DNA from: Octopus bimaculoides
Lineage: Eukaryota
Direction of reading: 5' to 3'
DNA length: 64,000 nt
Assembly: GCF_001194135.2 (NCBI RefSeq)
Contig: NC_068983.1
Coordinates: forward strand, 79,926,204 to 79,990,203
The notes beneath the pieces are model-generated. The model searched no databases, was not told the DNA's origin, and saw only the letters and a program-made list of their open reading frames with translations. Shown one piece after another: positions 4,690 through 64,000 of this stretch. Both the position numbers and the translations under genes were made by a program. How positions within the stretch are numbered: position 1 is the stretch's first letter; every line of letters begins with the position of its first letter.

Positions 4690-5883
4690 CAGGGGTTGGA
4701 CAAAATAATGGAAACACCTAGCATCATAGCATCATAATTTTGAAATATCTACAAAACTGTCAAAAGCTTGATTATTTCTATATTTTTGATTTATTATTAG
4801 TGTTGCCTAATATGTTTTGCTAAAATTCCTGTTTCTTTTCAAATATCATAAAAAAAAGGTAATTATAATTCATTAAAATGACAGATCTATCAGACTTTCA
4901 AAGAGGTCAAATCGTTGGTGCTTGCATGGAAGGCACTAGCATAACAAAAACAGCCGGAATGTTTGATGTATCAGGAAGTACTATACTGAAAGTAATAACA
5001 GCCTTTGTGAAAGAGGGAAAAACCTCCTCGTTGAAACAAACCTCCAGAAGAAAACCAAAACTTTCAGATAAGGACTGTCGGACTCTTATGCGAATTGTTA
5101 GAAAGGATCACAAAAGTACAGCTCCCAAAATTACTGCAGAACCCAGTTTCCACAAAAACTGTTCACTGGGAACTGCACAAAGCTGGATTTCACAAACTTT
5201 GTAAAGTGTTTAGAGTGGAGTAAAAACCTACAGAATTGGTCCCTAGAGCAGTGAAAGAATGTTATTTTCTCGGACAAGTCATCCTTTGCCTTATTTCTGA
5301 CCACTGGCTGAGTATACATGTGGAGACAGCCAAAAGAAGCATTTGACCCAAACTGCCTTCTTCCAACTGGTAAACATCTGTGATGATCTGGTGAGGGGCT
5401 ATATCTTGGAAATCCACCAAGCCCAATGGTTTCCCTTCATGGCAGAATTAATAGTCAAGACTGTTTAAGCATTTTATCTGATCAAATTCATCCTATGGTT
5501 GCAGAACTGTTTCCAGAGGGAAACACAATCTTTCAGAATGATAATGCACCAATTCACACAGCTAAAGTTGTTATTGAATGGCATAAGGAACCTTCTAGTG
5601 AAGTTGAACATCTTATCTGGCCACCACAGTCCCCAGATCTCAATATTGATGAACATTTATGGTGCATTTTAGAAAAACAAGTAAGGAGTCAATATCCTCC
5701 ACCATCATCACTACAAGAACTGGAGATTGTTTTAGCTGAGGAATGGGCAAAACTTCCTTTGGAAACAATTCAAACTTTGTATGAGAATTCAAGCTGTAAT
5801 TACTGCTAAGGGTGGTCCTACCCCATATTAAAATTAATTTGTTTGAAATTTTAAGGTGTTTCCATTATTTTGTCCAACCCCTG
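4690..5883 (+). mobile_element. Full-length Tc1/mariner DNA transposon (1194 bp), DD36E-type, inactivated
   Basis: Perfect 30-bp TIRs (caggggttggacaaaataatggaaacacct at 4690-4719; reverse complement at 5854-5883) flanked by TA on both sides (4688-4689, 5884-5885), enclosing a transposase pseudogene. Confidence 0.97.
4878..5831 (+). pseudogene. Tc1 transposase pseudogene with frameshifts, small deletions and stops
   Basis: N-terminal HTH (MTDLSDFQRGQIVGA), GRKPKL-like RRKPKLS, FSD(K)SSF, FQNDNAPIHT, WPPQSPDLNIDEHLW and terminal KGGPTPY*. ORF pieces 4878-5204 and 5426-5809. Confidence 0.95.
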
Positions 5884-9849: not shown

Positions 9850-10325
9850 GCAATATGCTGTGCTTGAGAAGACCTGTCAAGCCAAGTGAAATCATAGGTG
9901 CGGCTGATGCTGGTATCACATAACTGACACCCATGTTGGTGGCACATAAAAAGTACCTTTCAAGCATTGGGCCTTACTGAGGTAAAGTGGCCAATGCCAG
10001 TGGCACATGAAAAGCTCCTTTAGAGTGTTGGGTCTCATGGAGGCTATGATGAATGGCCAAGACCTTTGACATTATGTCATGCTTGAGAAGAAGACCCATC
10101 AAGCCAAGTAAAGTTGCAGTCATGACAGATACTGGTGTCACACAAACTGCACTCATGCCTGTGTCATGTAAAAACATCCATTACACTCTCAGAGTCATTG
10201 GCATTAGGAAGAGCATCCAGCCAAATCAGACTGGAGTTTGGTGCAGCCTTCCAGCTTGTCAGCCTTAGTCAAACTGTCCAACTCATGCCAGCATGGACAA
10301 TGAACGTTAAATGTTGATGATGATG
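9850..10325 (+). mobile_element. RTE 3'-UTR-only copy (5'-truncated LINE or partner SINE)
   Basis: Same modules as 58500-59218; ends gttaaatgttgatgatgatga. Confidence 0.85.
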
Positions 10326-10391
10326 AATTATACTACACAGTTTTATACAGATAGATGACCATTGAGCTATCAATATTTTTTACAACCCTAA

Positions 10392-10603
10392 GGCAGCGAG
10401 CTGGCAGAAACGTTAGCATGCCGGACGAGATACTTAGTGGTATTTCATCTGTCTTTACATTCTGAGTTCAAATTCCACCACGGTTTTGCCTTTCATCCTT
10501 TTGGGATCAATAAATTAAGTACCAGCAACATACTGGGTCGATCTAATCGCCTGGCACTCTCCCCAAAAATTTCGGGCCTTGTGCTTAGAGTAAAAAAGAA
10601 TAT
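10392..10603 (+). mobile_element. tRNA-derived SINE (family A here; Meta-domain-like centre), well preserved
   Basis: ggcagcgagctggcagaaacgttagc; B box gagttcaaattcc; gcctttcatccttttgggatcaataaattaagtaccag; A/T tail. Confidence 0.9.
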
Positions 10604-11329
10604 TTTTTACAACTCTCTCAGAATAGATCCACCAGACATTATTAACAATATTAACAAAGGGTTGAATAATTTCTATGACACACTAAATACCACAATGTCA
10701 GAAATCATAGTCTTTCCTTTCTAACAATTATAGCAAATTCCTTTTTGAAACCATCCATCATAATGTCACAAATATATCTATTTCTCAAGAGACAAAATAA
10801 CTTTTGTTGTTATATTAGACTAATGCATGACTGTGTACTGAGTTATTGTTATTACTTTATGTAACTTAAAAGACAAAATCAGTGAATTCCAGGCTAAAGT
10901 TTTCATTAACGTCACAAAGAGAAACATTGCCCTCAAAGCAGTTTTCTCTTAGTTTATGTAATATACATACATATATTATCTTTTTTTTCTTTTCTTTTTT
11001 TTTTCTTTATACATATAGAGAGCTACATTGTCCAGTGTAACCATCCCTAATTCTCAAAGAAAATATTTTTTAATTAATAAAATATGGAAAGGAAAAAAAA
11101 TAAAGTGAAATAACATAGCAAAATAGTGCATACCTGAAACTACTTTGATGTTTTCTCCTGGTAGTATGTAAATAATATTTTCTTTATTTCTTTAAAATTA
11201 TAATTGCTAAAACAACAACAAAAAAAAAGAGTAAGTTATTCTGGTGGCTGTAAAAAGGGTAAATACCTCCTTTGTTCATGAATGACCATGGCATTGCACC
11301 TGGAAAGTTACCCTCTGAGGCACAAGTCC

Positions 11330-12129: not shown

Positions 12130-12410
12130 TTATCATTATCATTTTGCATCTGCTTTCCATGACGGTAACTGGTAAGCCAGAGAGCTGTACTAAGTTCCAG
12201 TCTGATCTAACATGGTTTCTACAGCTGGATGCCCTTCCTAATGTCAACCACTCCAAGAGTGTAATAAGTGCTTTTTATGTACCACCAGCATGGGTGTTTT
12301 TGTGTGTCTCTGGCATGGGTGCTTTTACATGCCACCAGCATTGGCCATGACTAAAATTTCACTCAGTTTGATGAATCTTCTCAAGCACAGCATACTGCCA
12401 ATATATATAT
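12130..12410 (-). mobile_element. RTE 3'-UTR-only copy
   Basis: Reverse complement of the family tail (ctggatgcccttccta...accactcc), with a (CAT)n-like tail at the left. Confidence 0.8.
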
Positions 12411-13973: not shown

Positions 13974-14385
13974 GGCAGCGAGCTGGAAGAATCCTTAACA
14001 TGCCAGGCAAAATGCTTAGTGGCATTTCATCCATCTTTACGTTCTGAGTTAAAATTCTGCTGAGGTCAACTTTGCCTTTCATCCTTTCAGGATTGGTGAA
14101 ATAAGCACCAGATATACACTGAGGTCGATGTAATTGACTAACCCCCCCCTCCCCCAAAATTTCAGGCCTTGTGCCTATAGTAGAAAGGATTATTATTATT
14201 ATTATTATTATTATTAATAATAATAATAATATCACGGTCAGCTTTGCCTTTCACCCTTTTGGGGCTAATAAAATAAAGTATGGGCCAAGTAATGGAGTTG
14301 ATGTAATCGACTTGCACCCTCCCATCAAAATTGCTGGCCTTGTGCTAAAATTAAAAAGAATTTTTATCATTATCATCATAATTAT
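13974..14385 (+). mobile_element. Family A SINE plus (ATT)n plus a partial second copy
   Basis: Matches 10392-10603; tandem partial copy from about 14235. Confidence 0.85.
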
Positions 14386-20863: not shown

Positions 20864-21510
20864 TTTCTGTATTTTAAAACAGACATGCATTTTTATTGAA
20901 AACCATACAGTGTTGTCATAGTTATTTTGTATCATTACTTGTGTAGCTTTTGTAATATGTATCATTAAAATTATATCCACACCATGACTATATAAATTCA
21001 TGTTCAACAAAACAGATTGCAAAGAATTTTTTTTTTGCCTCTAGTGTATCTTGTTATTTGATTGATCACATCTGCATCATATTTTTATATCACACTATCT
21101 ATTTATTGGAAGGTCTATCCAGCTTACATTAAGATAGATCCACAGGAATAATCAGATACCTAAGATAGAGAGAGGAGTAGGTTGGGGAGAGAGACAAAAT
21201 CCTTGCACACGGTGATGGTATACCTCAGTATTTTCTAGAAAAATGAAGCATCTGTCTTGTCAGTCCGTGTCAAACTTAATCATTTAATTGTAGGCATACC
21301 ATCACATGGTTTCCATTTTTAAGATTACAGAATTTTAGATATATTTAGTTGCTACATTAATAGAACCATAACAAAAGATCTTTCAGTGGCTCAAGAATCT
21401 TCTTCATTGGCATAGTATTTTATTTTCATTGTAATTCAACAAATCTTGAAAATATTTCTTCATATTAGTATTAAATTTTGTGCATGAACATATATATATT
21501 TATTTTAAAA

Positions 21511-21610
21511 TATCCTGTTAATTCTAAATGTTTTTTTCTATTCCAGGTAAGTATAATACTTGAAGTCGAGTGATTTATATTTCTAAATCAAGTTTGTGCT
21601 ATTTGTGAGT
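21511..21610 (+). other. Candidate recursive splice site (ratchet point) with RS-exon
   Basis: Branch-like gttaat/ctaaat, tract tttttttctattccag, then immediately GTAAGT (21547). AG-free for 76 nt upstream. Downstream donor GTGAGT at 21605. Confidence 0.6.
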
Positions 21611-22904
21611 ATAACAATATTATATTAAATTTAATTTCTATTAAAGAATTAGTGAGTAGTTGTATGTTATCTGTTTCATATCTTTTCATTAGAAGAACTC
21701 ATTTTTCTTACCATTTTTTTTTAATGTAGATAGCATAAAATAATGCAATTAATAAAACATTCAAATGAAAGTAACCAAAAAACATTGTTTTTATCCAATA
21801 CTTTAAAAATATAATTTGTAGTGTATCTGTATTTCAGTGAAATATATTTGTGATATTTTAATATCAAATAAATAGTGCTGTTCATAAATAGACTATTGCA
21901 TTTCAAAATTATGAATATGCATTCATCATCATACTCATCATCATCATCAGTATTATAGCATCCACTTTCCAGCTAGGATGGGTCTCATTGTCTTATCTGA
22001 AAGACTCAATATTTTAAAATTTGACCTCACCACTTCTTTCCATGTTATCTTCCTTAACCACAAATTAGTGCTCTCATGAAAAGGAGATAGCAATTTTCAC
22101 TCTGCACCCATCATCCATTTGCATTTTCTACCATGCAAATGTAGTCAACCCTCTTGCTTATATCATCTGATATGAGCCAACAAAGGAGATGCTACTTGGT
22201 GATTCAAGCTCTTGAAAATAGCAGCCAAAATTCCTTCAAATTACACCTTGTCAAAGAGAAAGAAGTCATTGAATAAGGCAGTCCTGGGTACACCATGTGT
22301 GAAAAGAAAATGGAATGGTTATGACTTGAATGTCTTTAATTAATTGTCTGCTGGATAAATCTGACCATGGGCTACACAGCAATATCAGTTAATGTCATTA
22401 ATACCCATAAACTTCCTTAGCTTGCTTGTGTTCCACCTTTCATGCAGATCAACATTGTACATTCGATAAATTATACTTCCTTAAAAACTTCCACAAAATT
22501 CCAAGCTTCATACGTTTTATGAATGCCTCATACTTCTAAATTACATCATTTTAATTTTCTAAGATTTATTTCTTTATTATTATTATTATTTTGGCTTAAC
22601 ATTGCTTAACATTGCTTTAGATTTTTATGATATATCTCAGTTTTTGTGTCCCTTTTTTATCCGTGTGATTCAATCTTGTAATGCTTCTTTGATCAACCTC
22701 CACTTTAAGAAACAACTGTTATCTCCTCAATATGAGAATAGAATAGAACTAGTTGACAAATGTGGGGAAACTGAAAGGTCCAGTCCTCAGTTCCTTTCTA
22801 TTCATCCATAGTCCAGAGAAGTTTAAGACCAGATGCCTGTCAAAACTGATATATATATATATAGTAAATAAATTTTAAAAAATGAAGAACAAACACAAGA
22901 AAAA

Positions 22905-24552: not shown

Positions 24553-25525
24553 CATCATTATATGGAAACTCACAGCTTATTGTTCTGGGTGTGATGGAAC
24601 GTGTCAGCTGTTCACAGACTGCAGACAAAGGTGACACTTATTTACTAGTCATGCTTCAAGAACCCTGCAAAAGACTCTTGCAGTTCCAAGCAGTGATGAT
24701 TTTTCTAGGTGTTCTACCTTCACATTTGCACCGATCCTTTTCAGCCATGTTGCTAGTTGAGTACTGATACTCCTAAGTGCACCAATTACTACTGGTATTG
24801 CATTTACTCTTTTCATTGGCCACAATCTTCGTATTTCCCACTTCAAATCATCGTAGTTGTTTTATTTTTTCTTCTTCTTTCACATTGATCCTGTTGTTAC
24901 CGGGGCATGTTATGTCGATTATCATATATGGTCTTTCTTCTTTATTCACCTCAACAATGTCTGGTGATCACACTGGATCATTGCATCCCACAGGATTTTG
25001 CAATTCTCATTTTCGGTGACTCCTTCTGAAGTTTTCTCATACCATGTCCTTGCTCTTTGTAGGCTGTGATTTCCACAGATCTCCTAATGGATCATTCTTG
25101 CCACATTGTCAGGACATCTTTTGTATTTGCATTGTGCCAATTTCAGGCATTCACTAACAATGTGCCATACCATTTCACCCCTCTCACCACACATTCTGCA
25201 TTTGTCACTATCAGTAGTGTTGTCTATTCCACACTTCATATAATTAGTCCTTAATGCTTGTTCCTGAACTGCGCATATGAATGCTTCTCTCTCTATCTTC
25301 AGGTCACTCTTTATCCATAGGCACCAGTCCTCTGTATCTGTCTTGACGTTCACATCTCTTGCAAACTGACTGTACATTTCCTCTTCTTTCCATGCTTTTT
25401 CTTTTTTATTTGGTTCTTGTTTGAATTTTTCTTTATTTATGCAATTTTCAGTTTTGATGACACTGGCCTACTTTGTGTGTTTCAACAGTAGCTCCACAGC
25501 ATTTTTTATATACCACCCTTGACTG
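24519..25525 (-). mobile_element. R4/Dong-type non-LTR retrotransposon 3' part (CCHC zinc finger plus restriction-like endonuclease)
   Basis: CRMCGERGEMVWHIVSEC (C-x2-C-x8-H-x4-C), KILWD, PDIVEVNKEERPYMIIDITCPG (PD...D), KWEIRRLW...IPVVIGAL...LGTARV. The 3' end runs into (TAA)n. Confidence 0.9.
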
Positions 25526-25559
25526 TTTTCTTCTACTTCGATATAGTCATGACAACTTA

Positions 25560-25772
25560 TCAAAGCCATCAGAATCATTAGCATGCTGGGCAAAATGCTT
25601 AGTGGTATTTCATCCATCTTTACATTCTGAGTTCAAATTCTGTTGAGGTCGACTTTGGAATTTCATCTCTTTGGGATGTCAATAAAATAAATACCAGTAT
25701 AGTACTGGGGTTGATGTAATCAACTGTCTCCCTTCCCTACAAATTTTAGGCCTTGTGCCTTTAGTAGAAAGG

Positions 25773-25828
<56 letters not shown>

Positions 25829-25830
25829 GC
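25560..25830 (+). mobile_element. Family A SINE with long (ATT)n tail
   Basis: gagttcaaattctgttgaggtcgactttg...ggccttgtgcct. Confidence 0.85.
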
Positions 25831-26016
25831 CACTCTTCATCCTCTCTCTACTGCAAGTCATCACTTCCTGTCCCCTGAACCACTTCTATTTGGGTCTATC
25901 TTTCTTTCTCATCGTTTTTCTCTTCCAGGTCATATTTGCCATCAACTTTTGTTCAACATGCACTACATTCATCCCTATCACATCTTTAAACATCATCCAC
26001 TCTCTTTTATGCCCAT

Positions 26017-26189
26017 AGGTGTAGGCATGGCTGTAGAAGCAAGTGTGGCTGTATGATCAACAAGTTTGCTTCACAACCACCTAGTTTTGAGTTCAGTCCC
26101 ACTGTGTGGCACCTTGGTCAGATATCTCCTGTTATAGCTCAGGTAAACCAAAACCTTGAGTGAATTTTGTTGATGGAAACTGAAAGTAG

Positions 26190-26251
<62 letters not shown>

Positions 26252-26445
26252 TCTGTGTCTACTTGTCTTGACATCACATGATAACTGCAAATGAATGTAA
26301 CTTTCATACAAGCAGTGCCATTCGTTTCCGTATTTCTCTGAAAGTATGTCTGGCCAAGGGAAAATAATATCTTGCTTGGAAGCAGGTGTGGGTTGGTGAC
26401 AGAAAGAGCATGCTTCAATAAATGTGAGCATGGAAAAGTTGACAT
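26017..26445 (+). mobile_element. tRNA-derived CORE-like SINE (family B here) with internal (GT)n
   Basis: ggtgtaggcatggctgt...gagttcagtcccactgtgtggcaccttgg...ggaaactgaaag, (GT)n, then tail. Confidence 0.85.
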
Positions 26446-26653
26446 TAAAACAATGATAATGATGATGACAGTGATGCAAACTGAAGTTACTTATTTGTTT
26501 CAAAAATGATTTTATTTCTTGAGTTTTGGATATACAACCAAATCTTTTAATATTTCAATAATCACAATGTGACCATTTGAAATACTTGGAATCTGTGTAG
26601 GATGTCTATTCACTTTATAACATTATACTACTTCTAAACTTGTAGGTTTATAG

Positions 26654-26740
26654 CAGTGGTTCCCAACCAGGGATCTGTAGTCCCTTGGTGGTCCGCAAAA
26701 GTAGTACTGGGGGTCCGTGAACTAAATTTAGAATTTTATA

Positions 26741-26791
<51 letters not shown>

Positions 26792-26857
26792 GAGGATAAG
26801 CATATTAAAAGGGGGCTATAGGAAATCTAATTTGAATAAAACAGTTGGGAACAACTG
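26654..26857. mobile_element. hAT-type MITE with an internal (TG)n(TA)n tract
   Basis: TIRs cagtggttcccaacc / agttgggaacaactg match at 13 of 15; 8-bp TSD gtttatag / gtttacag matches at 7 of 8. Confidence 0.85.
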
Positions 26858-26984
26858 GTTTACAGGAATGCAGAATTTATGTAGAAATTATTTTCCTTCT
26901 GATATTTATTTGAATGTATTAGTTAATTACTTACCCAATATAAAAATTAATTTTAATTAAAGTATAATCAAGTAAAACTATCAC

Positions 26985-28678
26985 CTCTGACACCGGACTC
27001 TATAACTCCTATGAAATTTACACTAGCAATGCTACAATGCCACCTTAAGAATATACATAACTATACCTCTCCTGGTCTTGATGGTGTTACATAATTACTT
27101 CTCAAACGTGGTGGGTACTTTCTTCTGAACCAACTTTCACTGTTCTTTCAATTCTGACTTGACAATGGTGTTACTCCAGAGCTGTGGAAAGCTGCCAATG
27201 TTATCCCTCTGTTCAAAAAAGGTGACCGCACATCGCCTGTCAACTATCGCCCCGTCAGTCTTACTAGCTGCATCGTCAAACTGATGGAATCCTGTGTCAG
27301 AGAAACTCTCTGGAACTTCTGGAAGTCTTGCAGCCTCATCCAGCCATCACAATTTGGATTTATTCCTAACTCCAGCTGCTGTAATCAACTCATTGAGTTT
27401 CTTGAGGACATTACCCAAATCATTGATGGCGGCTCCCGGGTGGACGTTGTTTACCTGAACTTTGCCAAGGCTTTTAATTCTGTGCCAGACAAAAGACTTA
27501 TGGTGAAACTCTCTGCAATGGGATGATCTTTATAACTGGTTGGAGTCCTTCATTATCGGCCCAAAAGAAGTTGTCACAGTTCTAGGACAGCACTCTTCAC
27601 CCTATGAGATGACATCTGGTGTACCACGGGGAACTGTTCTTGGCCCCCTTTTATTTGTCGCATATATTAATGATATAGATGCCAATTTAAAGAATGCTAC
27701 AGTGCTGAAATATGCAGATGACATCAAGCTGTACCTCAAAATAAAGAGAACAGATCCTGTACACTTTAGATCTTTATTACAATCAGACCTGGAAACAATG
27801 CAGCAATGGATCATGGATTGGTAACTCAAGCTGGCTGTGGACAAATGTACCACCATGCATTATGGGAGGAAAAACCCAGCGTCTACTTACTCCTGCCACA
27901 ACACTAGTCTCAAAAATTCTTCTTGTGAACATGACCTGGGCATTATTGTCGACAGCGATTTGCATTGGACAAAACACATTGCTAAAATTGCCAAGAAGAC
28001 TGAGGATGTCTTGGCATCACTTACCAAGTCCTTTATGAGCCGCTCTCCGGCTATCTATCTGAGGCTTTATATAGCCATGGTGCGGCCTCACCTGGAATTT
28101 GCATCACCGGCCTGAAACCCCTATCTTGCCCAGGATATTAATCGTCTGGAAGCCGTTCAGCAATGTGCAACCAGGAGAATACCCGCCATCAGGCATTTGC
28201 CATACTCTGAACGCCTTACTTCCCTGGGCATGGATACATTGAAACTCTGACATCTGGCAACTGACTTGGTAGACATCCATCAAATTATTAACCATCTTAC
28301 TAACAATGACTGTGAGCACCTTTTCAAATTCCACCTGTCTAACATCCGTGGACATGTTTACAAAGTCAGAAAACAGCACAGCTCCCATGACTTTCAGAAA
28401 CATTTTCTTACACTAAGAGTTGCTGAAGTATGGAACAAACTCCTGGCATCAGTTGTTAGTTGTCGGAGCACTGCATCCTTCAAAACTTCCACGCTTCCTG
28501 AGATTTGCCAACACTACACCTGATTTTCTCCCCTCCATACACACTCAAGCACGTATCTGACTCATATACTTTTCACTTTCGAGGTATTTGTACATTACTG
28601 TATATGCTTTATACGCACTTTTGACAAGTTGTAGTGCACCTGAGCACTGTATACAATAATTTCATTATTATTATTATA
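26985..28678 (+). mobile_element. CR1-clade LINE, 5'-truncated, with (ATT)n tail
   Basis: SPGLDG, NYRPVSLTS, QPSQFGF, VDVVYLNFAKAFNSV, GVPRGTVLGPLLFVAYIND, KYADDIKLY, EHDLGIIVDSDLHW, YIAMVRPHLEFASP. 3' stem-loop agtgc-acctga-gcact before the tail. Confidence 0.95.
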
Positions 28679-35166: not shown

Positions 35167-35229
35167 NNNNNNNNNNNNNNNNNNNNNNNNNNNNNNNNNN
35201 NNNNNNNNNNNNNNNNNNNNNNNNNNNNN
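35167..35229. other. Assembly gap
   Basis: N run. Other gaps at 45749-45944, 47428-47437 and 49933-50061, all at or next to microsatellites. Confidence 1.
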
Positions 35230-35749
35230 ATATATCAATAAACTTATTCTCTGATTTTGTGATTTTTCTAGTTATTCTGAAATGTTGTTTATTCTCTGTG
35301 TCTTATTTTTATCAGTAAATATATTTTGTTTAACAGAGTAGCTAAGGTTATATAGACTAATAATTCCTTACCTTTCTTTCATCTTATATGCACACACACA
35401 CACACACATGTATTTCTTAAGGTGAACAAAAGTTCAGGAATTCAACCCCATTTTGAATAATTATATAACAGGGACCAAAACATAAATAATGACAAAACTC
35501 AGAATTAGTTGCTTGTTTAATATAACCTTGACTATATCTACTCTTAATTTGAAGGGTTTTAATGTACTAGTATGTTAGTGCTCTTCATTTCTCTGATATG
35601 ATGTTTAAAAGAAAATTAATTTTCAAGAAGAATTTTTGAAATAGTCAATGCTTAATTTTCGTGTGGTGAAAGTTCCTTGTAAAATAGTATTTTTCTCACA
35701 CATAGTATGTATTATTTCGTTATTTTTGTTAGCCACTAATAACCTATCA

Positions 35750-37570
35750 ATCAGGTGACTCTGCTAGCCAGATTGATTTCATTTTCACCAAACAGTGGGA
35801 TGCATGGTTGCTCTTAAATACAAAGGCCCTCCCTGGTGAAGAATGTATCCCCCAACATAGACTAGTTATTAATGACTTTAGACTCAAGGCTAGAAGGATG
35901 CCCAAAACCAGACCAATCTGGAAAAGAAGGACTTGGGAGCTTAGGAAACCTTCACATGTTCAGAGATTTGGGGGTATCCTTACCGAGAAATTTGATAGTA
36001 GAGTGGAGGAGCTTCATTCATGTGGCATAGAAGGCAGCTGGAAATTCCTGCGAGACAGTTTGCTGAGTACCACAGATGAAATCTGCAGCTGGTGCAAAGT
36101 TCCTTCCAGACCTAGGGTAACATGGTGGTGGCGCAATACTGTAGACAGGGCCATTAGAGCAAAGAAACAGACTTGGAATTCCTGGAAGAGTTGGGGTAGT
36201 AGGAGAATTATCAGATAGCCAAAAGGGAAGCTAAGAGACAGGTATATATAGCCAAGAGAGTAGCAGAAAAGAAAAAGTTTGCCAATGTTCACTGACTTGA
36301 GGACCAAAGAACTGAAGTATTTCGGATTACAAGACAGTGTGTGAGAAAAAACCGTGATATCATAGGTTAGTAAGAGTTGTACAAGCCCTGTACAGGGATT
36401 CTGTCAGTAAGGTGAAGGTTGGCAACAAGTATAGTGAAGTATTCTGGGTAGAAGTAGAAGTTCACCAAGGATCAGTCCTCATCCCACTCTTATTCATTAT
36501 AGTCCTCCAATCAATAACAGAGGGATTCAAGACAGACTGCCCTTGGCAGCTCCTCTATGCTGATGACCTTGCTCTAATAGCCAAGTCACTGCCAGAACTG
36601 GAGACAAAGTTTAGGGTGTGGAAGCAAGATATAGAATCGAAGGGCCTTAGGGTTAACCTAACAAAAACCGAAGTCTTAGTAAGTAGGAAGGCTGTCAATC
36701 ACAACCCCCTTCAGATAGATGGCCCTGCTTGATCTGTAGAAAAGGCGTGGGTAGAAACTCCATATGATGTAGCCTGTGTAAGCTATGGACACATAAAAGG
36801 CGCAGCAATATCAAAGGAAGGTTAATTGGGAAAATAGTTTTTGTGTGTGGTAGTTGCACTGGAGCAATAAACACTGAAGATGTACAGAAAACAGATTCTA
36901 TCACATGCCAGGAGGAGAAACTAGAAGTAGTTAATAGCTTCTGCTATGTTGGCAACCAAGTCTGTAGTGGGGGCAGTTGCTCTGAGAGTGTAGCGACTAG
37001 AGTAAGAATAACCGGGGCAAAGTTCAGGGAGCTCCTACCTCTGCTGGCAACTAAGGGCCTCTCGCTCAGGATGAAAGGTAGACTATGATTCATGTGTGTG
37101 AACTTCCATGCTACACAGCAGTGAAACATGGGCCATGAATGCTGAGGACATGCATAGATTTGAAAGAAATCAAGCTAGTATGATCCGCTGGATGTGTAAT
37201 GTCAGTGTGCACACACGACAGAGTGTAAGCACCCTGAGAGAAAAGTTAGGCATAAGAAGCTTCAAATGTGGTGTGCAAGAGAGGTGACTGCACTAGTATG
37301 ACCATGTGTTACGTATGATTGAAGACAGTTGTATGAGGAAGTGCCACTCCCTAACTGTAGATGGATCGTGTGGAAGAGGTAGACCCGGTGGCATGTAAAA
37401 AGCACCCACTACACTCTCAGAGTGGTTGGCATTAGGAAGAGCATCCTGCTGTAGAAGCATTGCCAGACCAGTTTGGAGCCTGGTGTAGCTGCTGGCCCTA
37501 CAGACCACAGTCAAACCGTCCAGCCCATGCCAACATGGAAGACTGACATTAAATGATGATGATGATGATA
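35750..37570 (+). mobile_element. RTE-clade LINE, 5'-truncated and internally deleted, with (GAT)n tail
   Basis: APE C-terminus (SQIDFI...PQHRLVI), RT motifs VHQGSVLIPLLF and LLYADDL, a PHD-like insert, F(C)YVG, the RTE C-terminus (GRGRP), and a 3' UTR ending in gatgatgat. Confidence 0.95.
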
Positions 37571-39080: not shown

Positions 39081-39916
39081 CATGAGTTACAGAAACTAAA
39101 GAGAAATTCTCAGGTTTTACATTTCCATCTGAATTTTATGATTATAATATTTCATATTGATGGTTACATGGTTATATGATTAACTGAGACCTTATACATT
39201 ATTACATCTAATATAAATTTGTCTGATTATAAGACATGATATGATACTAACCTAGTGAATTAATTTTTATATCCATTTGTCATCGCTTATAAACCCTCTG
39301 AATAATATCTGTTATAATTATCTTTAGGAGTTTCTGGAAAAATTATGAATATATTACAATAAGTTGTTTGAATATTGTTATAGAGATAATTGAATTTTCA
39401 TGCATATGATAATTTACAAGATCTTATGTTAGTCATTATTATCAGGAAGATAAAATTCATTGCTACTGGTATTACATTACAATGAATGACTCAATAACCA
39501 GAATAGAATATCACAAATTTAAAGTGATACTTAATGTTTGAAAAGTTTCATCCTTTGGTATGTAAACAGAATCCTAAAAGAAAGTATTTTTAGAAATTTA
39601 AAAAAAGATTATTACCATTAACTAACAAGTATGATTCTAATCATTCATACATAGAACCACATATTCTTTTGTTAACATTATGTTAAGCTTTTTGATATTC
39701 TTCGTATGATAAGTAATTCAAAGAAACTGCTTTTCAATTAATTTTGCTTGTATAGAGAATTCCTTGTTGATTTCAGCTACCCAAATTGTGTAACAAAGAA
39801 AAAGAACATTGTTAAAATTTTAGATATACCATGTCTTAAGATTAGTATGGAGGATTCATTAATCAGCAAAAAGACTTTGTAGTAGTGAATGTTATAGAGG
39901 TATTTTTCATATATAT

Positions 39917-40097
39917 TTTGGGGAGGAGGCCAGTCAATTAGATCAACTCCAGTATGAAACTGGTACTTAATTTATCGACCTCGAAAGGATGAAAGGCAAA
40001 GTTGACCTCGGTGGAATTTGAACTCAGAACATAAAGATAGACAATATACTGCTAAGTATTTCGCCTGGTGTGCTAATATTTCTGCTAGCTCACTGCC
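39917..40097 (-). mobile_element. Family A SINE
   Basis: aaggatgaaaggcaaagttgacctcggtggaatttgaactcagaac...gctcactgcc. Confidence 0.9.
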
Positions 40098-40799
40098 TTA
40101 ATTTCCAAACCATATATCAAAATATCAAAATACACCTCATATTTCAATCCAAGCAATAGATGAGAGCAGACAGCATTGAGAAATTATGCTACTGCAAAAT
40201 ATTAGTTCCATAAGTGTACAAAATGCATATACTTATAGAAAATAGAATGAAACAAGTCAAAGTTGAGGTTTAACTCTGCTTCTGCTCTGTTCTCTATTTC
40301 TTGTGTCTGCTTCAAGGTGATTCAGCCAAGAAATTTAGTATAGCAAAAGAGTGAAGCTTCAAATGAATAAACAAATCTGTTATATATGAATTGAATTTTT
40401 TTTTATCTCTTATTTGTACATCCAAATACATATATTGAAATTCATCAATATATACATTCGTTTACTTTGAGCCTGCTAAAATGCATACATGTTTACAGTT
40501 ATATAAGCTGTAAGCATTTACTTTAAATCCAAAATAAAGAAAAGAATTGCTTTCTTGGAGTTAAAACAATTTTCAATGCAATCCTTAGATCAAAGCCTTT
40601 TAGCCTTAACATATTGTGAAAAAAATTAAGATCCTAAAGTTTTATTTAGAAGGAAAATATTATTCCTAAAGCTTTTTTTCTTTTTCTCCCCCATAAATAT
40701 TATCTACATTTGCCTGCTTTAGATTTACTGAAATATGTTTCGTATTTGACCTAACATTTTCATCATATGTATGTATATATATATATATATATGGGATGA

Positions 40800-41452
40800 G
40801 GTGGTGAAGCATGACCTTTGAACATTGGGCCTCACAGAGGCAATGACAGGAGACTGAGACCTTTGGGGATATGCTGTGATTGAGAAGACCTGGCAACTAA
40901 AGTAAGATCACAACCATGGCCAATGCCAATGTTGCATGTCCAGCTATTTAAAAGTACCCTTGAGGCATCGGGTGATATGATATACTTGAGAAGACCTATT
41001 GAGTCAAGTAAAACCAAAATTGTAGCTGTGGCCTGTTCCCCCAGACTTCCTCCCATGCCGGTGGCATGTCAAATGCACCATCTAAAAGTGGTCGATACCA
41101 GTGCTGCCTGACTGACTCCTGTGCCAGTGGCACGTAAAAAGCACCATCCAAACATGGCTGATGCCAGTACCCACTGACTGGCTCCTGTGCCGGTGGCACA
41201 TAAAAAGCACTATCTGAATGTGACCGATACCAGGTCCACCTGACTGGCTCCTGTGCTGGTGGCATGTAAAAAACACCTACTATACTCTCAGAGTGGTTGG
41301 CATTAGGAAGGGCATCCATCTGTAGAAACATTGCCAGATCAGATTGGAGCCTGGTGCAGCCACTGGCTTTTCAGACTTCAGTCAAACCGTCCAACCCATG
41401 CCAGCATGGGAAACGGATGTTTAACAATGATGATGATGATGATGATGATGAT
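40800..41452 (+). mobile_element. RTE 3'-UTR-only copy with internal tandem modules
   Basis: ctgactggctcctgtgccggtggcac...aaaaagcac repeated about four times; (GAT)n tail. Confidence 0.9.
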
Positions 41453-42159
41453 ATATATAATATATTGTTCTCACTGCATCACATTTCTCCCAGGCATTGA
41501 TTTAACTTTTCTTAATGGTTCATAAAATTGTATGAAAAAAAAAACAATGTATATTACCTTGTCTTTCTTTTATCTGTCTCTTTTCTCTTTATGCACATTT
41601 TTCAAGAATGAATTTCAGCTATGAAAAATACCTCTATAACATTCACTATTACAAAGTCTTTTTGATGATTAATGAATCTCCCATACTAATCTTAAGACAA
41701 GGTATATCTAAAATTTTAGCAATGTTCGTTTTTGCTACACAATTTGGGTTGCTGAAATCAACAAGGAATTCTCTATACAACAATTCAGTCTTCTAGAAAT
41801 AGCAACCAAATAAGATTGTTTGAAAACACTTGCCCAAAGTATCCACAAGGTAGGATTAAACCTGGAACATTGTGACTCTGAAGCAGATGTGTGTGTTACA
41901 CAGTTCAGCATGTTAAGATTGGCGGAATATTGTACTCTTTCCCCCACTTCTCTCTCCTACTTCTTTTTGTCTAGAAAAAATTATGGTAGCACCAGGAAAA
42001 GAATGAAAAGGATAGGTTCCACCAGATTTCAAATGTCCAGGACAGGCAACATGTCATGGGCATGCTTCTACAACTCCATTAGTTATTTAGGGATCAAGGC
42101 AGTAAGATTACACATATGCATATATGAGTGTGTGTGTGTAAATAGATAGACAGATAGAT

Positions 42160-43058: not shown

Positions 43059-43277
43059 GGCAGTGAGCTGGCAGAATCATTAGCGTGTCAGATAAAAATG
43101 CTTAGCAGCTTTTCTTCCAGCTTTTCATTCTGATTCCATATCCAGCTGAGGTTGATATTTGCCTTTCATCCTTTCAAAGTTGATGAAATAAGCACCAGTT
43201 GAGCAATGGAGTTCAATGTAATCGACTAGTTCTCTCCCCCAAAATTCCATGCCTGTTCCTACAATAGAAAGGATTAT
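43059..43277 (+). mobile_element. Family A SINE with a degenerate TSD
   Basis: Flanked by tctcttgtacccctta and tctcttgtatcctta. Confidence 0.85.
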
Positions 43278-45651: not shown

Positions 45652-45944
45652 CATCATCATCATCATATATATATATATATATATATACATCACCATCATC
45701 ATCATATATATATATATATATATATACATCACCATCATCATCATATATNNNNNNNNNNNNNNNNNNNNNNNNNNNNNNNNNNNNNNNNNNNNNNNNNNNN
45801 NNNNNNNNNNNNNNNNNNNNNNNNNNNNNNNNNNNNNNNNNNNNNNNNNNNNNNNNNNNNNNNNNNNNNNNNNNNNNNNNNNNNNNNNNNNNNNNNNNNN
45901 NNNNNNNNNNNNNNNNNNNNNNNNNNNNNNNNNNNNNNNNNNNN

Positions 45945-46014: not shown

Positions 46015-46205
46015 ACTGGCTCCTGTGCCGGTGACATGTAAAAAGCTTCCACTACACTCTCTGAGTTGTTGGCATTAGGAAGAGCATCCAGCTGTAGAAA
46101 CTCTGCCAGACCAGATTGGAACCTGGTGTAGCTGCTGGCTCTCCAGAGTCAAACCGTCCAACCCATGCCACCATGGAAAACGGCCGTTAATTGATGATGA
46201 TGATG
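46015..46205 (+). mobile_element. RTE 3'-UTR-only copy
   Basis: ctggctcctgtgccggtgacatgtaaaa...gatgatgatg. Confidence 0.85.
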
Positions 46206-47427: not shown

Positions 47428-47437
47428 NNNNNNNNNN

Positions 47438-47999: not shown

Positions 48000-48445
48000 C
48001 ACATCATCATCATTTAACATCTGTTTTCCATACTGGCATGGGCTGCACGGTTTGACAGGAACTGGCCAGACTCCAATTGTTTGTTGTGGTGTGGTTTCTA
48101 TTGCTGGATGCCCTTCCTATTGCCAACCATTATACAGAATGTGCTGGATGCTTTTTACATGCAACTGGCATGGGTGCATTTACACAGCACCAGCACATGT
48201 GCATTCTAAGTAGCACTGGAACTTGTAGGGGTCAAGCCTGTATGTAGGGATGATGATGGTTTTACTTAGCTTGACATTTTTTCTCAAGTACAGCAAATTG
48301 CCACAACTCCTGGTCCCTTGTCTTTTCCTCAGTGAGGCCCAGCATCTGAAGATCCTTTCTCAACACTTCATCCCATGTCTTCCTGGGTCTACCCCTTCCA
48401 CAATTAGAGGTTCCCTCCACAATTAGGGCTTGGCACCTGTTTATG
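48000..48445 (-). mobile_element. 5'-truncated RTE LINE (C-terminus plus 3' UTR)
   Basis: CGRGRPRKTWDEVLRKDLQMLGLTEEKTRDQELWQFAVLEK followed by the family 3' UTR and gatgatgat tail. Confidence 0.9.
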
Positions 48446-49932: not shown

Positions 49933-50063
49933 NNNNNNNNNNNNNNNNNNNNNNNNNNNNNNNNNNNNNNNNNNNNNNNNNNNNNNNNNNNNNNNNNNNN
50001 NNNNNNNNNNNNNNNNNNNNNNNNNNNNNNNNNNNNNNNNNNNNNNNNNNNNNNNNNNNNNCA

Positions 50064-51800: not shown

Positions 51801-52984
51801 TTTGTGTATTCACCTGACTGATAGGCTGGTCAGTTACCTATCAGTCAGTTAGTGTTGCAAATCAGTTGCAGAATTCCAAGAACCTTGATCCTTCATTATT
51901 CTATGTAACATACACTTAGCCTCAAAATACATCATTTCAGCTGCCATTGTGTTGGCCAACTTAGCCATGATAATCATAACCATGATAATAAGTAGCTGTC
52001 ATTTGTTGTAGAGGTTGTCTGTAAAAGGTAGTCATAGAAACAGTCATTTTATTCATCTAGCAAGATCTGAATGTGATACCAATGAAAAGTTAACTGTTGC
52101 TGTCATGTATCCCGTGACTATTCTAAGTTTAATTCTTCTGTCACATTACTCTGGCTACCTTACTTTATCTCTCCTTTCTCTGCCAACAATATGTCTCCAT
52201 CAGTGCTGTTACATTGAAAAATTCATACTTGAGTTATGGATAAGGAATCTGGATGAGGATTCTTTCCATCTTACTACTTGCACACACATAGCACCTTTAC
52301 TTGCTTCTGCTCAAGCATTTCTATAAACAATCCCTCCAGATCTACCTTTCATTGCACTAACATAGCATTGGTGGTGGAAGCCTTAAAGTTTTATACTTGA
52401 CAGGAAGACAGGAGTTTCCAGTGGTGGATGGGTTATTTGATGTCTATTTTCTGACTCTGAAAAGAAGAGTTTTGGTGATGTGTTTGTTTGATGGTGGTTA
52501 AGGTGTTCTCATACCTGGTCTGGTATTTCTATCTGATCACTCCACTATAGTATGCAATTCTGTCTAATATGGTGTTAGTCTTGTATATGCAACAAGGGAT
52601 TTTCATTGTACTTGTGACTGCCATGATTTCAGCACAGTTATTGGTTAGTTGCTTTTCATCTCACAAACCACTAGCTTGCTTCACAGTAAACCTCAGAATG
52701 AGAACATAATATGAGAAAGGAAGCAAGAGATGTGCTTGCCAGAGTTAGAAAGTTTTTCGGCAATAACAGATACTAAAAAACATGACATTAATAAACATGA
52801 TGCTTGTAATTAGGCTAATAATTTTTTTAATTTTGGCACAAGGCTGGCATTTTTAGTAGGAAGGGTTTAGTCAATTACATTGCCCCCAGCACTTGCCTGG
52901 CACTTTATTTTACTGACCTTAGAAGAATGGAAGGTAAACTTGACCTCACTAATATTTGAACTCAGACTGTAAAGATTTGGAACA

Positions 52985-53250
52985 AACATTAAGAAAATCA
53001 TCATCATCATTTAACATTCATTTTCCATGTTGGCATGGGTTGGACAGTTTGACAGGAGCTGGCAAGCCAGAAGACTGCACCAAGCTCCACTGTCTGTATT
53101 GGTACGATTTTTACAGTTGCATACCCTTCCTAGTGTCAACCACTTAACAGAATGGACTGGCTGTTTTTACATAGCACCAGCACTGGCAAGGTCTATTTGG
53201 CATAATTTTTAGCTGGATCTCTTCCTAATGCCAACCACTTTACTGCGCAA
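52985..53250 (-). mobile_element. RTE 3'-UTR-only copy
   Basis: catcatcatcatttaac...catgggttggacagtttgac is the reverse complement of the family tail. Confidence 0.8.
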
Positions 53251-56200: not shown

Positions 56201-56369
56201 GAAAATACTGAATGTTTACATTGTAATATGTTAAGTATTAAAAGCTATTTATTTGTCTGCCTTAGGAGGAACACTCATTTGGGACTAATGCAGATAATGG
56301 CTTCATGTTCTGTTGGCTAGTATTTGGTTGGATTACACCGAGCTTGTCTTAAAGTTATTTTCATAATAT

Positions 56370-56581
56370 TGGTTTCAAATTTTGGCTCAAGGCCAGCAAG
56401 TTCAGGAGAGGGGTAAGTCCATTACATCAACCCAAGTATTCAACTGGTACTTATTTTATCGCCCCCAAAAGGATGAAAGGCAAAGTTGACCTCAGTGGAA
56501 TTTGAACTCAGAACATGAAGATAGATAAAGTGCCACCAAGCATTTCGCCCAGCATACTAACAATTCTGCCAGCTCACCACC
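56370..56581 (-). mobile_element. Family A SINE
   Basis: Near-complete reverse complement of 10392-10603. Weaker family A relics lie near 3640-3790, 33330-33480, 44080-44240, 45060-45240, 46205-46420 and 52830-52980. Confidence 0.9.
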
Positions 56582-57327
56582 ATAGATATACATAACAATA
56601 TTGATATGGTCTTATATGTTGCAATCTGCAATATTTAACAAATTTGGTTTACAGAATTTCCTACAGACAGATGTCAAAATAACTCTCTGCTCTCTTAAGA
56701 AAATCACATTTGATGAGTAAATTTCTCAAAATCATATTCTTTAACAATTTTCAATGTTAACACACATGCATGCACACACACACACATGCGTGCACACACA
56801 CACACACACATGCTCATATATAATATAATTTTGGAAATTAATCTTTACCAGCATAGTTTAAAGACCTCTGTCAGACATTTGTAGCTTCATTTGAAAGATA
56901 GACTCAGCTGATCAAACATCACTGAGACATCATTCACATGGAAGCAATAATTAAGTTAGTGTTAACATATTTAATGTAATGAACATCAAAAATCTAGTTA
57001 GAAATACTTATGTGGTGAGGGGAGACACTATTACCTTACTGATAAATACCATTCTAATAATTTTTGACAAGTACAGGAGAGAACTACAGATATCTTTAGA
57101 TTTGAATAGGCCTTCCCAGTAAAGCATAGACTTCACTATACTTGCTGAAGTAAAATAATGAGAAAATCACAAAGTAGGAAAAAAACTAAGGACAAAACTG
57201 GAAAATTAGCATATTTGAAAAAATAACAAACCAGAGATTTATTTCACAGAAAAGCTATCTGCTTGAAAAACAAGTTAAGTTAATGTAATGTCTGGACGTT
57301 TTTTCTATTTTTTCTTTATTTAATCAG

Positions 57328-57456: not shown

Positions 57457-57764
57457 GTAAGCTCAGTATCAGCTGATGATGCTAAATATGGAATGACAAA
57501 TGAATCCTATCAACCAAGAAGAGGACTATCCCCAACCCCTAACAGACTTTCACACAATTTCTACCTATCAAATTTTGCTCACAATGTTTTGGTGCACTTG
57601 AAACTTTGGTTGGAGACACTTCAATTTAGATATTGAATCAAACTTGAAAGCAAGTAATTGCAAAGTGTATATTTTAACCATACACCTATCCTTGCACTTA
57701 CTTTACTAAACAAAATGGTTAAAATATTATTAGTCAAGTAGGAAAGCAAACAAATCATAAATCT

Positions 57765-63586: not shown

Positions 63587-63874
63587 TGTGGTATGACGTC
63601 AGTGTCTGGGGAGGCTGACCGGAAGGGCGAGTTGACCGGAAGGGGAAAAAGGGCAGAGGGAGCCTCGATCGGGATTCGTGCCCTTTTCGAATGGGGTTGT
63701 GGTCAGGACAAGACGTGTTAAGTGACGGCCTAAGTTTGGGAGAAGCAGCTGCTATTCCTGGTGTACTTTGGGTCGGGGCAAGCTTCAAGGATTGGATACC
63801 GCAAGACAGACTCGCAGTCGAGGAAAGGAAAACCGAGGTAAGGCGATTACATCTACTCGTACGCACACACCACA
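63587..63874 (+). mobile_element. 5' LTR (288 bp) of a young LTR retrotransposon
   Basis: Abrupt switch to GC- and CpG-rich sequence. TGTGGT...ACCACA terminal inverted repeats, followed by a short leader and a gag-like ORF. The 3' LTR lies outside the window. Confidence 0.8.
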
Positions 63875-63909
63875 AGCTATTTCGGCCCCACGTGCAGAAA
63901 TTCGCCGCG

Positions 63910-64000
63910 ATGGCAGCCACCAAGATTAGGATCGCCAGCGATGTGATCAGGCCTTTTAATGGCGAAGGAGATGTGATGGCTTGGATACAAAAAATTAGGC
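63910..64000 (+). CDS. gag: Gag-like ORF N-terminus of an LTR retrotransposon (probably Ty3/Gypsy), cut by the window end
   Basis: gccgcgATGG start context. MAATKIRIASDVIRPFNGEGDVMAWIQKIR resembles the F-x-G-x-G-D-V-x-x-W opening of invertebrate Gypsy Gags (family recall, not a search result). Confidence 0.7.
   Translation, partial: MAATKIRIASDVIRPFNGEGDVMAWIQKIR

What the first reader, a model, noticed from the sequence alone, without database searches (positions are those of the whole stretch)
21469..21610. Ratchet-point-like recursive splice site with a poison RS-exon in a probable cephalopod long intron
Seen: a strong acceptor (branch-like gttaat/ctaaat, tttttttctattccag, no other AG for 76 nt) abuts a perfect donor GTAAGT with zero nucleotides between them (21546|21547). 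A second donor, GTGAGT, follows 58 nt downstream (21605). Those 58 nt are frameshifting and contain a stop in all three frames. Established: this is the architecture of recursive-splicing sites and their cryptic RS-exons in Drosophila and in long vertebrate neuronal genes. Inference: the window is inside a very long + strand intron that is removed stepwise. I know of no description of recursive splicing in octopus, but have not been able to check. It is the only strong YnCAG|GTRAGT that I found on either strand by eye.
Basis: partly seen in the sequence, partly recalled or inferred. Interest (0 to 1): 0.78.

Follow-up and report, generated by a model that had tools for sequence, protein, structure and literature searches.

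The report
Candidate recursive splice site, unvalidated
A near-perfect back-to-back "end of intron / start of intron" signal with a short stop-filled pseudo-exen behind it really is in the sequence and is rarer than chance in one window, but with no host gene, RNA or cross-species evidence it is only a credible candidate for stepwise (recursive) intron removal, a mechanism already known in flies and vertebrates.

Summary
The motif is exactly as described. There is a 76-nt AG-free zone, a TTAAT branch-like site at -25, and a 13/14 pyrimidine tract with TT at -6/-5. CAG|GTAAGT sits at 21546|21547, GTGAGT follows 58 nt downstream, a third GTGAGT follows at 105 nt, and all frames carry stops.

It is the best of 398 AG|GT sites in the window. 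Chance expectation per window depends on stringency:
- about 0.4 with a crude PWM (both strands);
- 0.03 on the + strand for tract + AG|GTRAGT;
- 0.006 when the AG-free zone is added;
- a further x0.04 for the downstream donor.

Non-repeat sequence gave no exon, Pfam domain, ncRNA or protein match. "Inside a + strand intron" and "cephalopod" are therefore unproven.

Unique sequence does show about 5% T>A and C>G on the + strand across the window. This is the invertebrate pattern for the sense strand of introns, and gives modest support for + strand transcription.

Published sense/antisense enrichment of such motifs in large introns is 4-22x in invertebrates and about 1x in vertebrates. On that basis a genuine recursive site (about 45%) is roughly as likely as coincidence (about 40%). 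The mechanism is known, nothing here validates use, and interest is modest.

The parts
21469..21544 (+). 76-nt AG-free zone upstream of the acceptor (AG exclusion zone)
   Evidence: The previous AG ends at 21468. Only 58 of 3502 AG-free runs on this strand are >=76 nt.
21518..21522 (+). Branch-point-like TTAAT (yTnAy), candidate branch A at 21521, 25 nt upstream of the acceptor G
   Evidence: It lies within the -36..-21 range of mapped fly ratchet-point branch points (10.1101/006163). This is a motif match only; such pentamers are common in AT-rich DNA.
21531..21546 (+). Polypyrimidine tract TTTTTTTCTATTCC (13/14 Y, TT at -6/-5, C at -3) plus the acceptor AG
21547..21552 (+). Consensus donor GTAAGT abutting the acceptor with zero nt between them (candidate ratchet-point 5' splice site; genomic context CAG|GTAAGTAT)
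   Evidence: It is the top-ranked of 398 AGGT sites in the window.
21547..21604 (+). 58-nt candidate cryptic RS-exon (length 3n+1, stops in all three frames)
   Evidence: The size agrees with the fly cryptic RS-exons of about 50 nt (PMC8605326).
21605..21610 (+). Second donor ttt|GTGAGTAT (candidate RS-exon 5' splice site)
   Evidence: The chance of a GTRAGT 25-150 nt downstream is 0.042.
21652..21657 (+). Third donor tta|GTGAGTAG, giving an alternative 105-nt unit (3n, but with stops in all frames)
   Evidence: It shares an 11-nt repeat with donor 2: ATTTGTGAGTA / ATTAGTGAGTA.

Best explanation
Working explanation, held at a little under even odds: this is a genuine recursive splice site of the fly "ratchet point plus cryptic RS-exon" type, on the + strand of a long intron of a host gene not yet identified.

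Proposed mechanism; every step is inferred from the sequence and from what is established in Drosophila and vertebrates:
1. The strong acceptor (branch A near 21521, U-rich tract, CAG) and the GTGAGT donor 58 nt downstream (or the one at 105 nt) are recognised together by exon definition.
2. The upstream host exon is spliced to 21547. This removes the 5' part of the intron as a lariat and regenerates a 5' splice site, exon|GTAAGT.
3. That regenerated donor outcompetes the downstream GTGAGT. The 58 nt and the rest of the intron are removed in the next step, and no trace is left in the mRNA.
4. If the downstream donor is used instead, a 58-nt frameshifting, stop-containing exon is included and the transcript would be an NMD target.

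Shown here: the motif architecture, its rarity in the window, and a strand asymmetry compatible with + strand transcription.
Not shown: transcription, intron membership, use of the site, conservation.
For: 1. All sequence elements are present and near consensus. These include TT at -5/-6, which 99.5% of fly ratchet points carry, and a branch-like A in the -36..-21 range (10.1101/006163).
2. A second strong donor lies 58 nt downstream. Fly cryptic RS-exons are about 50 nt, generally out of frame, and flanked by a downstream donor (PMC8605326).
3. The site is rare by chance. On the + strand, 0.03 per 64 kb are expected for tract + AG|GTRAGT and 0.006 with the AG-free zone, with a further x0.04 for the downstream donor. 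It ranks first of 398 AG|GT sites.
4. It is not part of a recognisable repeat or TE. There is no self-similarity inside the window, no LINE protein similarity nearer than 24.6 kb, and no local tandem duplication.
5. After masking TEs, repeats and microsatellites, the + strand has S_TA = +4.9% and S_CG = +4.8%, with T>A in 14 of 15 4-kb blocks. T>A with C>G on the coding strand is the invertebrate intron pattern (PMC5786239 citing Touchon 2004).
6. In all five invertebrates tested by Shepard et al., ratchet-point motifs are 4-22 times more frequent in large introns than on the complementary strand. The background is about 0.1 per 100 kb (PMC2773006). In such genomes most sense-strand motif hits are not chance.
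Against: - No host exon, protein match, Pfam domain or ncRNA was found anywhere in the non-repeat part of the window. The region may be intergenic.
- The taxon is unresolved, so whether the invertebrate rules for skew and motif enrichment apply is an assumption.
- Vertebrates, whose SINE/LINE-rich genomes this window resembles, show no sense enrichment: ratio 0.9-1.5.
- A generic PWM gives 0.4 equal-or-better sites per window, and a comparable site sits on the - strand at 725.
- The strict criteria were chosen after seeing the site.
- AATAAA is not depleted on the + strand.
- No RNA, lariat or conservation evidence is available. Collection scans for the site found nothing.
Confidence: 0.45

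Rival explanations
1. The site is a coincidence: a fortuitous juxtaposition of a T-rich tract, an AG and GTAAGT in 27% GC non-coding DNA (intergenic, antisense, or intronic but ignored by the spliceosome). It has no programmed role, and the downstream GTGAGTs are equally accidental.
For: - Bare AG|GTRAGT occurs at the chance rate: 2 observed against 3-4 expected.
- A generic PWM expects 0.4 equal-or-better sites per window, and the runner-up is on the opposite strand.
- At the published background of about 0.1 motif per 100 kb per strand, a Gb-sized genome holds thousands of chance sites.
- No gene, exon or transcript evidence exists in the window.
- The T-rich + strand (32 T-runs >=8 against 16 A-runs) inflates acceptor-like sites on this strand: 91 against 73.
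- Stops in all frames and a 3n+1 length are what non-coding AT-rich DNA gives anyway.
- The thresholds that make the site look rare were set post hoc.
Against: - The full combination is rare. Tract, 76-nt AG-free zone and perfect CAG|GTAAGT are expected 0.006 times per window on the + strand, and the added downstream GTRAGT brings this to about 2-3 x 10^-4.
- Three GTRAGT within 105 nt has p of about 0.04.
- The window-wide T>A and C>G asymmetry argues that the + strand is transcribed. In invertebrate large introns, sense-strand motif hits are mostly in excess of chance.
Confidence: 0.4
2. The acceptor at 21546 and a downstream donor (21605 or 21652) bound an ordinary short exon. This would be a cryptic, poison or non-coding (UTR or lncRNA) cassette of 58 or 105 nt that appears in some mature transcripts. 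The GTAAGT at its 5' end would be incidental, not used for re-splicing.
For: - A strong acceptor and strong donors lie at exon-like spacing.
- Hundreds of annotated mammalian exons begin with a GT-type 5' splice site motif whose re-splicing is repressed (RS-exons repressed by the EJC; PMC6224609 abstract; PMC8605326).
- Strand asymmetry is compatible with + strand transcription.
Against: - Both units have stops in all three frames, so neither can be coding.
- No similarity to any protein or Pfam family was found.
- A perfect 9/9 U1-complementary CAG|GTAAGT at the exon start would be expected to compete effectively with ttt|GTGAGT.
- No transcript data are available.
Confidence: 0.1

Closest known systems
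Drosophila intronic ratchet points with cryptic RS-exons (Hatton 1998; Burnette 2005; Duff 2015; Joseph 2018/2021)
   Same: [quoted passage not shown]
- A prominent U-tract with TT at -5/-6.
- GTAAGT as the regenerated donor.
- A branch-like A near -25.
- A short (about 50 nt), out-of-frame, stop-containing unit closed by a second donor. That donor is no stronger than the ratchet-point donor (GTGAGT preceded by ttt, against CAG|GTAAGT).
   Different: - The host gene, intron length and strand are unknown.
- No junction reads, saw-tooth coverage or lariats are available.
- Conservation was not examined; fly ratchet points are ultraconserved.
- The taxon is not an insect and is unresolved.
- The tract is interrupted (G at -17, A at -7), whereas fly logos show a longer uninterrupted U-run.
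Vertebrate RS-sites with RS-exons acting as a binary switch or poison exon (Sibley 2015; Blazquez 2018)
   Same: - YAG|GT site.
- The RS-exon is defined with a downstream 5' splice site.
- The two donors compete.
- Inclusion would introduce premature stop codons.
   Different: - Only about nine fully suppressed intronic sites are regarded as definite in mammals (PMC8605326).
- The motif is not enriched on the sense strand of large vertebrate introns (PMC2773006).
- Those sites lie in identified long neuronal genes and are conserved. None of this is known here.
Intronic pseudoexons and decoy splice-site pairs
   Same: Consensus-like acceptor and donor motifs at exon-like spacing in non-coding sequence, with no coding capacity.
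   Different: - Pseudoexons are by definition unused or used only after mutation.
- They do not usually begin with a perfect donor abutting the acceptor.
- Here the composite is considerably rarer than generic pseudoexon signals.

Membership tests
Zero-nucleotide recursive splice site (ratchet point), Drosophila type | [quoted passage not shown] | tested here: met
   CAG|GTAAGT at 21546|21547. It is the best of 398 AGGT sites in the window.
Zero-nucleotide recursive splice site (ratchet point), Drosophila type | Prominent polypyrimidine tract with TT at -5/-6 (196 of 197 fly sites) | tested here: met
   TTTTTTTCTATTCC has 13/14 pyrimidines, T at -6 and -5, and C at -3. The criterion is from 10.1101/006163.
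Zero-nucleotide recursive splice site (ratchet point), Drosophila type | Downstream 5' splice site bounding a short cryptic RS-exon (about 50 nt, usually out of frame, poorly conserved) | tested here: met
   GTGAGT at 21605 (58 nt, 3n+1, stops in all frames) and at 21652 (105 nt). The criterion is from PMC8605326. This is met at sequence level only.
Zero-nucleotide recursive splice site (ratchet point), Drosophila type | Located in the sense strand of a long intron (>11 kb in flies) | tested here: inconclusive
   No exon or host gene was detected: 89 ORFs gave no protein hit, Pfam found nothing on 302 non-TE ORFs, and Rfam and tRNA scans were empty. The + strand T>A and C>G skew of about 5% fits the invertebrate sense-strand pattern, but this is indirect.
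Zero-nucleotide recursive splice site (ratchet point), Drosophila type | Splicing intermediates: upstream-exon-to-site junction reads, saw-tooth read density, lariats from and to the site | not testable with these tools
Zero-nucleotide recursive splice site (ratchet point), Drosophila type | Evolutionary conservation of the AG|GT core relative to control AGGT sites | not testable with these tools
   No related genome is reachable. The exact-pattern scan of metagenome contigs for the site found 0 and the scan for the window's SINE found 0. The protein collection holds no close relative of the window's TEs.
Vertebrate RS-site / RS-exon (Sibley type) | YAG|GT site whose RS-exon carries a premature stop when included | tested here: met
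   Stops occur in all three frames of both the 58-nt and the 105-nt units. This is weakly informative, because AT-rich non-coding DNA almost always has them.
Vertebrate RS-site / RS-exon (Sibley type) | Resides in a very long, typically neuronal, gene and is conserved across species | not testable with these tools
   The host gene is unidentified and no orthologous sequence is available.
   The TE ORFs match only unnamed ENA contigs and a Pinctada (bivalve) protein, at 30-54% identity. An ENA contig carrying the best 1125-aa relative shares only about 66% DNA identity over a few hundred bases. The SINE consensus was not found in the literature text.

The most novel reading that the evidence does not exclude
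This animal (a mollusc, possibly a cephalopod) removes its giant introns stepwise with Drosophila-style zero-length ratchet points guarded by cryptic poison RS-exons, and 21547 is the first such site seen outside arthropods and vertebrates. This would imply that the ratchet-point/RS-exon design is an ancestral bilaterian solution to long introns, not a dipteran speciality.
Probability: 0.4. Interest if true: 0.5.

Novelty: new member of a known kind. Interest (0 to 1): 0.33.

Why it matters
If validated, this would extend recursive splicing with cryptic RS-exons to lophotrochozoans. Their intron-rich, repeat-rich genomes resemble vertebrate genomes in size, but their splicing signals may follow the invertebrate pattern.

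That would bear on an open question: is stepwise intron removal a general bilaterian answer to very long introns? Sense-strand motif enrichment in insects and sea urchin suggests it is; its absence in vertebrates suggests otherwise.

A single motif-level candidate cannot settle this. Its main value is as a concrete test locus, and as a prompt for a cheap genome-wide sense/antisense motif census in mollusc assemblies.

Tried and rejected
1. Host-gene search.
- 89 non-repeat ORFs (>=38 aa, GC >=0.36, both strands, 4948 aa concatenated) gave no hit in the 5.8-billion-protein collection.
- Pfam on all 302 non-TE ORFs >=38 aa gave only one sub-threshold hit.
- I ran no further search on the shorter ORFs prepared. 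One search showed that the collection holds no close relative of this genome's TEs, so success looked unlikely.

2. Exact look-ups of two window ORFs in the contig collection found nothing on record.

3. Taxon identification.
- TE ORFs matched only unnamed ENA contigs and a bivalve protein.
- The best ENA contig is not the same or a close species.
- The SINE consensus was not found in paper texts.

4. Orthologue and copy search by exact pattern in metagenome contigs found nothing, either for the site or for the SINE.

5. I tested whether the site is part of a repeat or TE, and rejected it. There is no self-similarity in the window, no LINE protein similarity nearer than 24.6 kb, and the LINE fragment at 23.4 kb is 5'-truncated.

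6. I tested whether the donor cluster is a tandem duplication, and rejected it. The adjacent 58-mers align no better than background (p = 0.11); only an 11-nt repeat links donors 2 and 3.

7. I considered a coding exon ending at CAG|GTAAGT and rejected it. By my own reading of 21469-21546, all three frames have stops.

8. RNA structure around the site is unremarkable (z = -0.34). Rfam and tRNA scans of the window were empty.

9. Poly(A)-signal depletion as a strand indicator was not seen: AATAAA occurs 83 times on + and 88 on -. GTAAG and AGGTA are about 2-fold rarer on + than on - (23 against 53, and 22 against 47). That would fit avoidance of cryptic donors on a sense strand, but it is weak and GTGAG does not share it.

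Full report
**What is in the sequence**

The + strand at 21527-21554 reads AATGTTTTTTTCTATTCCAG|GTAAGTAT. The acceptor AG ends at 21546 and the donor GT starts at 21547.
- The previous AG ends at 21468, leaving 76 AG-free nucleotides. Only 58 of 3502 AG-free runs on this strand are that long.
- The tract 21531-21544 has 13 of 14 pyrimidines, with T at -6 and -5 and C at -3.
- TTAAT (yTnAy) places a candidate branch A at 21521, 25 nt upstream.
- GTGAGT follows at 21605, 58 nt after the first donor. The 58 nt have length 3n+1 and carry stops in all three frames.
It gives an alternative 105-nt unit, also closed in all frames.

**Is it more than chance?**

The answer depends on how the question is posed.
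- Bare AG|GTRAGT is at the chance level: 2 in the window against 3-4 expected.
- Requiring >=13/16 pyrimidines gives 0.07-0.1 expected per 64 kb on both strands. Adding a 50-nt AG-free zone gives 0.01-0.02 under Markov nulls of order 1, 3 and 5.
- An empirical estimate uses the window's own heterogeneity. It has 30 acceptor-like sites, and the probability that GTRAGT follows an AG is 4 x 10^-4, giving 0.012.
- For the + strand alone the figures are 0.030 (tract only) and 0.0057 (tract plus AG-free zone). A GTRAGT 25-150 nt downstream has probability 0.042.
- Three GTRAGT within 105 nt somewhere in the window has p of about 0.04.
- Against this, a threshold-free ranking with a crude generic splice-site PWM puts the site first of 398 AGGT sites but expects 0.4 equal-or-better sites per window. 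The runner-up (TTTTTTTCATACAG|GTATGTGT, 725) is on the opposite strand.

The strict criteria were shaped by the site itself, so the truth lies between these figures. The site is unusual for one window, but a Gb-sized genome would hold hundreds to thousands of comparable sites by accident.

**What the site is not**
- It is not part of a repeat visible in the window.
- It is not covered by similarity to the LINE proteins fetched. The nearest such intervals are 13.7 kb and 24.6 kb.
- The donor cluster is not a tandem duplication: adjacent 58-mers align no better than background (p = 0.11). Donors 2 and 3 share an 11-nt repeat.
- The 78 nt upstream (21469-21546) are closed in all frames, by my own reading of the sequence. 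CAG|GTAAGT therefore does not end a coding exon.
- The RNA has no unusual structure (z = -0.34).

**Surroundings**

The window is AT-rich (GC 0.23-0.41 per 2 kb), repeat-laden eukaryotic DNA with four runs of N. It contains:
- a Tc1/mariner-type remnant with HTH and DDE_3 domains at 4869-5806;
- LINE reverse-transcriptase fragments at about 24.6-28.6 kb and 35.7-37.1 kb (RVT_1), and a related fragment at 57.7-58.5 kb;
- at least eight copies of a SINE-like element of about 180 nt ending in (ATG)n, and a second short dispersed family;
- many microsatellites.

I found no host gene.
- 89 non-repeat ORFs gave no hit among 5.8 billion proteins.
- Pfam found nothing in 302 non-TE ORFs from both strands.
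- Rfam and tRNA scans were empty.

The window's TE ORFs match only unnamed ENA contigs and one bivalve (Pinctada) protein, at 30-54% identity. The best such contig is not a close relative at the DNA level. The source genome's proteome is therefore probably not in the collection. The absence of exon hits is weaker evidence than it looks, and "cephalopod" remains unverified.

**Indirect evidence on transcription**

I masked TEs, self-repeats and microsatellites and measured base skew in the remaining 44-46 kb.
- The + strand has T>A (S_TA = +4.9%, block-bootstrap 95% CI 3.2-6.7%) and C>G (S_CG = +4.8 to +5.3%, CI 1.8-8.9%).
- T>A holds in 14 of 15 4-kb blocks.
- According to Bergman et al. (PMC5786239, citing Touchon 2004), T exceeds A on the coding strand of introns generally. 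G exceeds C there in vertebrates, and C exceeds G in invertebrates.
- The window therefore shows, in both components and at a magnitude like that of highly expressed fly genes, the invertebrate signature of a + strand transcription unit.

This is an inference. It has not been validated for molluscs. Residual unrecognised repeats could contribute. The poly(A) signal AATAAA is not depleted on the + strand. GTAAG and AGGTA are about two-fold rarer on + than on -, which would fit avoidance of cryptic donors on a sense strand, but the signal is weak.

**Comparison with what is known**

Fly ratchet points are juxtaposed 3'/5' splice sites with an unusually strong tract.
- TT occurs at -5/-6 in 196 of 197 sites, and mapped branch points lie at -36..-21.
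- They sit in introns of 11-133 kb.
- Only 6% of long introns have one (10.1101/006163).
- They come with a cryptic RS-exon of about 50 nt, out of frame and poorly conserved, closed by a downstream donor that normally loses to the regenerated one.
- The SA|SD core is ultraconserved (PMC8605326).

The present site meets every criterion that can be read from one sequence. Those that need annotation, RNA or other genomes could not be tested.

Shepard et al. (PMC2773006) provide the most useful calibration. Such motifs occur at about 0.1 per 100 kb on the complementary strand of large introns in all animals. On the sense strand they occur at 0.5-2.2 per 100 kb in sea urchin, fly, mosquito, bee and beetle (ratios 4 to >20). 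In eight vertebrates the sense-strand figure is only 0.08-0.14 (ratios 0.9-1.5). No mollusc was examined. I found no paper on recursive splicing in octopus, cephalopods, squid or molluscs.

**Weighing**

The following is my inference.
- A random site lies in a sense-strand intron perhaps 15% of the time. The skew raises this to roughly 40-50%.
- If this taxon behaves like the invertebrates tested, most sense-strand motif hits in long introns exceed chance. If it behaves like vertebrates, few do. I weight the two cases about equally.
- The above-threshold quality of the site and the strong downstream donor add a likelihood ratio of perhaps 3-5.
- The post hoc choice of criteria, the unknown taxon and the missing host gene pull the other way.

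I end at about 45% for a genuine recursive site, about 40% for coincidence and about 10% for an ordinary non-coding or poison cassette exon. The remainder is unassigned.

**Verdict**

The mechanism, if real, is a known one in a new taxon (new member of a known kind). A single motif-only candidate is of modest interest. Its value is as a defined locus for junction-read, saw-tooth, lariat and conservation tests, and as a prompt for a genome-wide sense/antisense motif census in mollusc genomes.

Noticed in passing
window 1-64000 (unique sequence after masking): There is a window-wide strand asymmetry. The + strand has T>A by 4.9% and C>G by about 5%, in 14 of 15 and about 11 of 15 4-kb blocks respectively. 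T-runs >=8 outnumber A-runs 32 to 16. This fits the invertebrate intron coding-strand pattern and suggests one + strand transcription unit spanning the window.
   Followed up: partly
window 725 (- strand): The second-best AG|GT site in the window is TGCTGCTTTTTTTCATACAG|GTATGTGT. It lies on the opposite strand, and its generic PWM score almost equals that of the reported site.
   Followed up: no
window 4869-5806 (+): A Tc1/mariner-type DNA transposon remnant. It has an HTH (HTH_23/HTH_28) plus DDE_3 transposase split over two frames, and is therefore degenerate.
   Followed up: partly
window 24650-28580, 35730-37090, 57760-58500: LINE fragments with reverse-transcriptase (RVT_1) ORFs broken by frameshifts, in both orientations. 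Their best relatives are unnamed ENA contigs and a Pinctada imbricata protein, at only 30-54% identity.
   Followed up: partly
window 10156-10326, 37385-37568, 41259-41439, 46026-46205, 59050-59218 (+); 12160-12290, 48002-48170, 52997-53186 (-): A SINE-like family of about 180 nt, 73% mean column identity over 8 copies. It has a conserved GGCATTAGGAAGGGCATCCAGCTGTAGAAA core and an (ATG)n tail. ARAGORN finds no tRNA-like head. The related 66-nt and 98-nt tandem arrays at 41056-41277 and 58557-58748 repeat its 5' part.
   Followed up: partly
window 10392-10607, 13974-14197, 25570-25781, 43059-43277 (+); 39916-40100, 52816-52976, 56363-56606 (-): A second short dispersed repeat family of about 200 nt, 70-83% identical between copies. 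It often abuts (ATT)n or (TAT)n microsatellites.
   Followed up: no
window 35167-35229, 45749-45944, 47428-47437, 49933-50061: Four runs of N (assembly gaps), three of them inside or beside microsatellites such as (TA)n and (CACG)n. The source is a draft scaffold, so local distances across these points are not reliable.
   Followed up: no
window 63550-64000: An abrupt GC-rich stretch (0.52-0.58) with an open frame running off the window end: ...MAATKIRIASDVIRPFNGEGDVMAWIQKIR. By my own recollection it looks like the start of a retroelement gag-like ORF. It gave no Pfam hit.
   Followed up: partly
window 39748-39911 vs 41620-41780: A 164-nt inverted pair at 93% identity, about 1.7 kb apart. It is the most similar repeat pair in the window and flanks one SINE copy and the 66-nt tandem array. 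It may be a recent inverted duplication or a foldback element.
   Followed up: no
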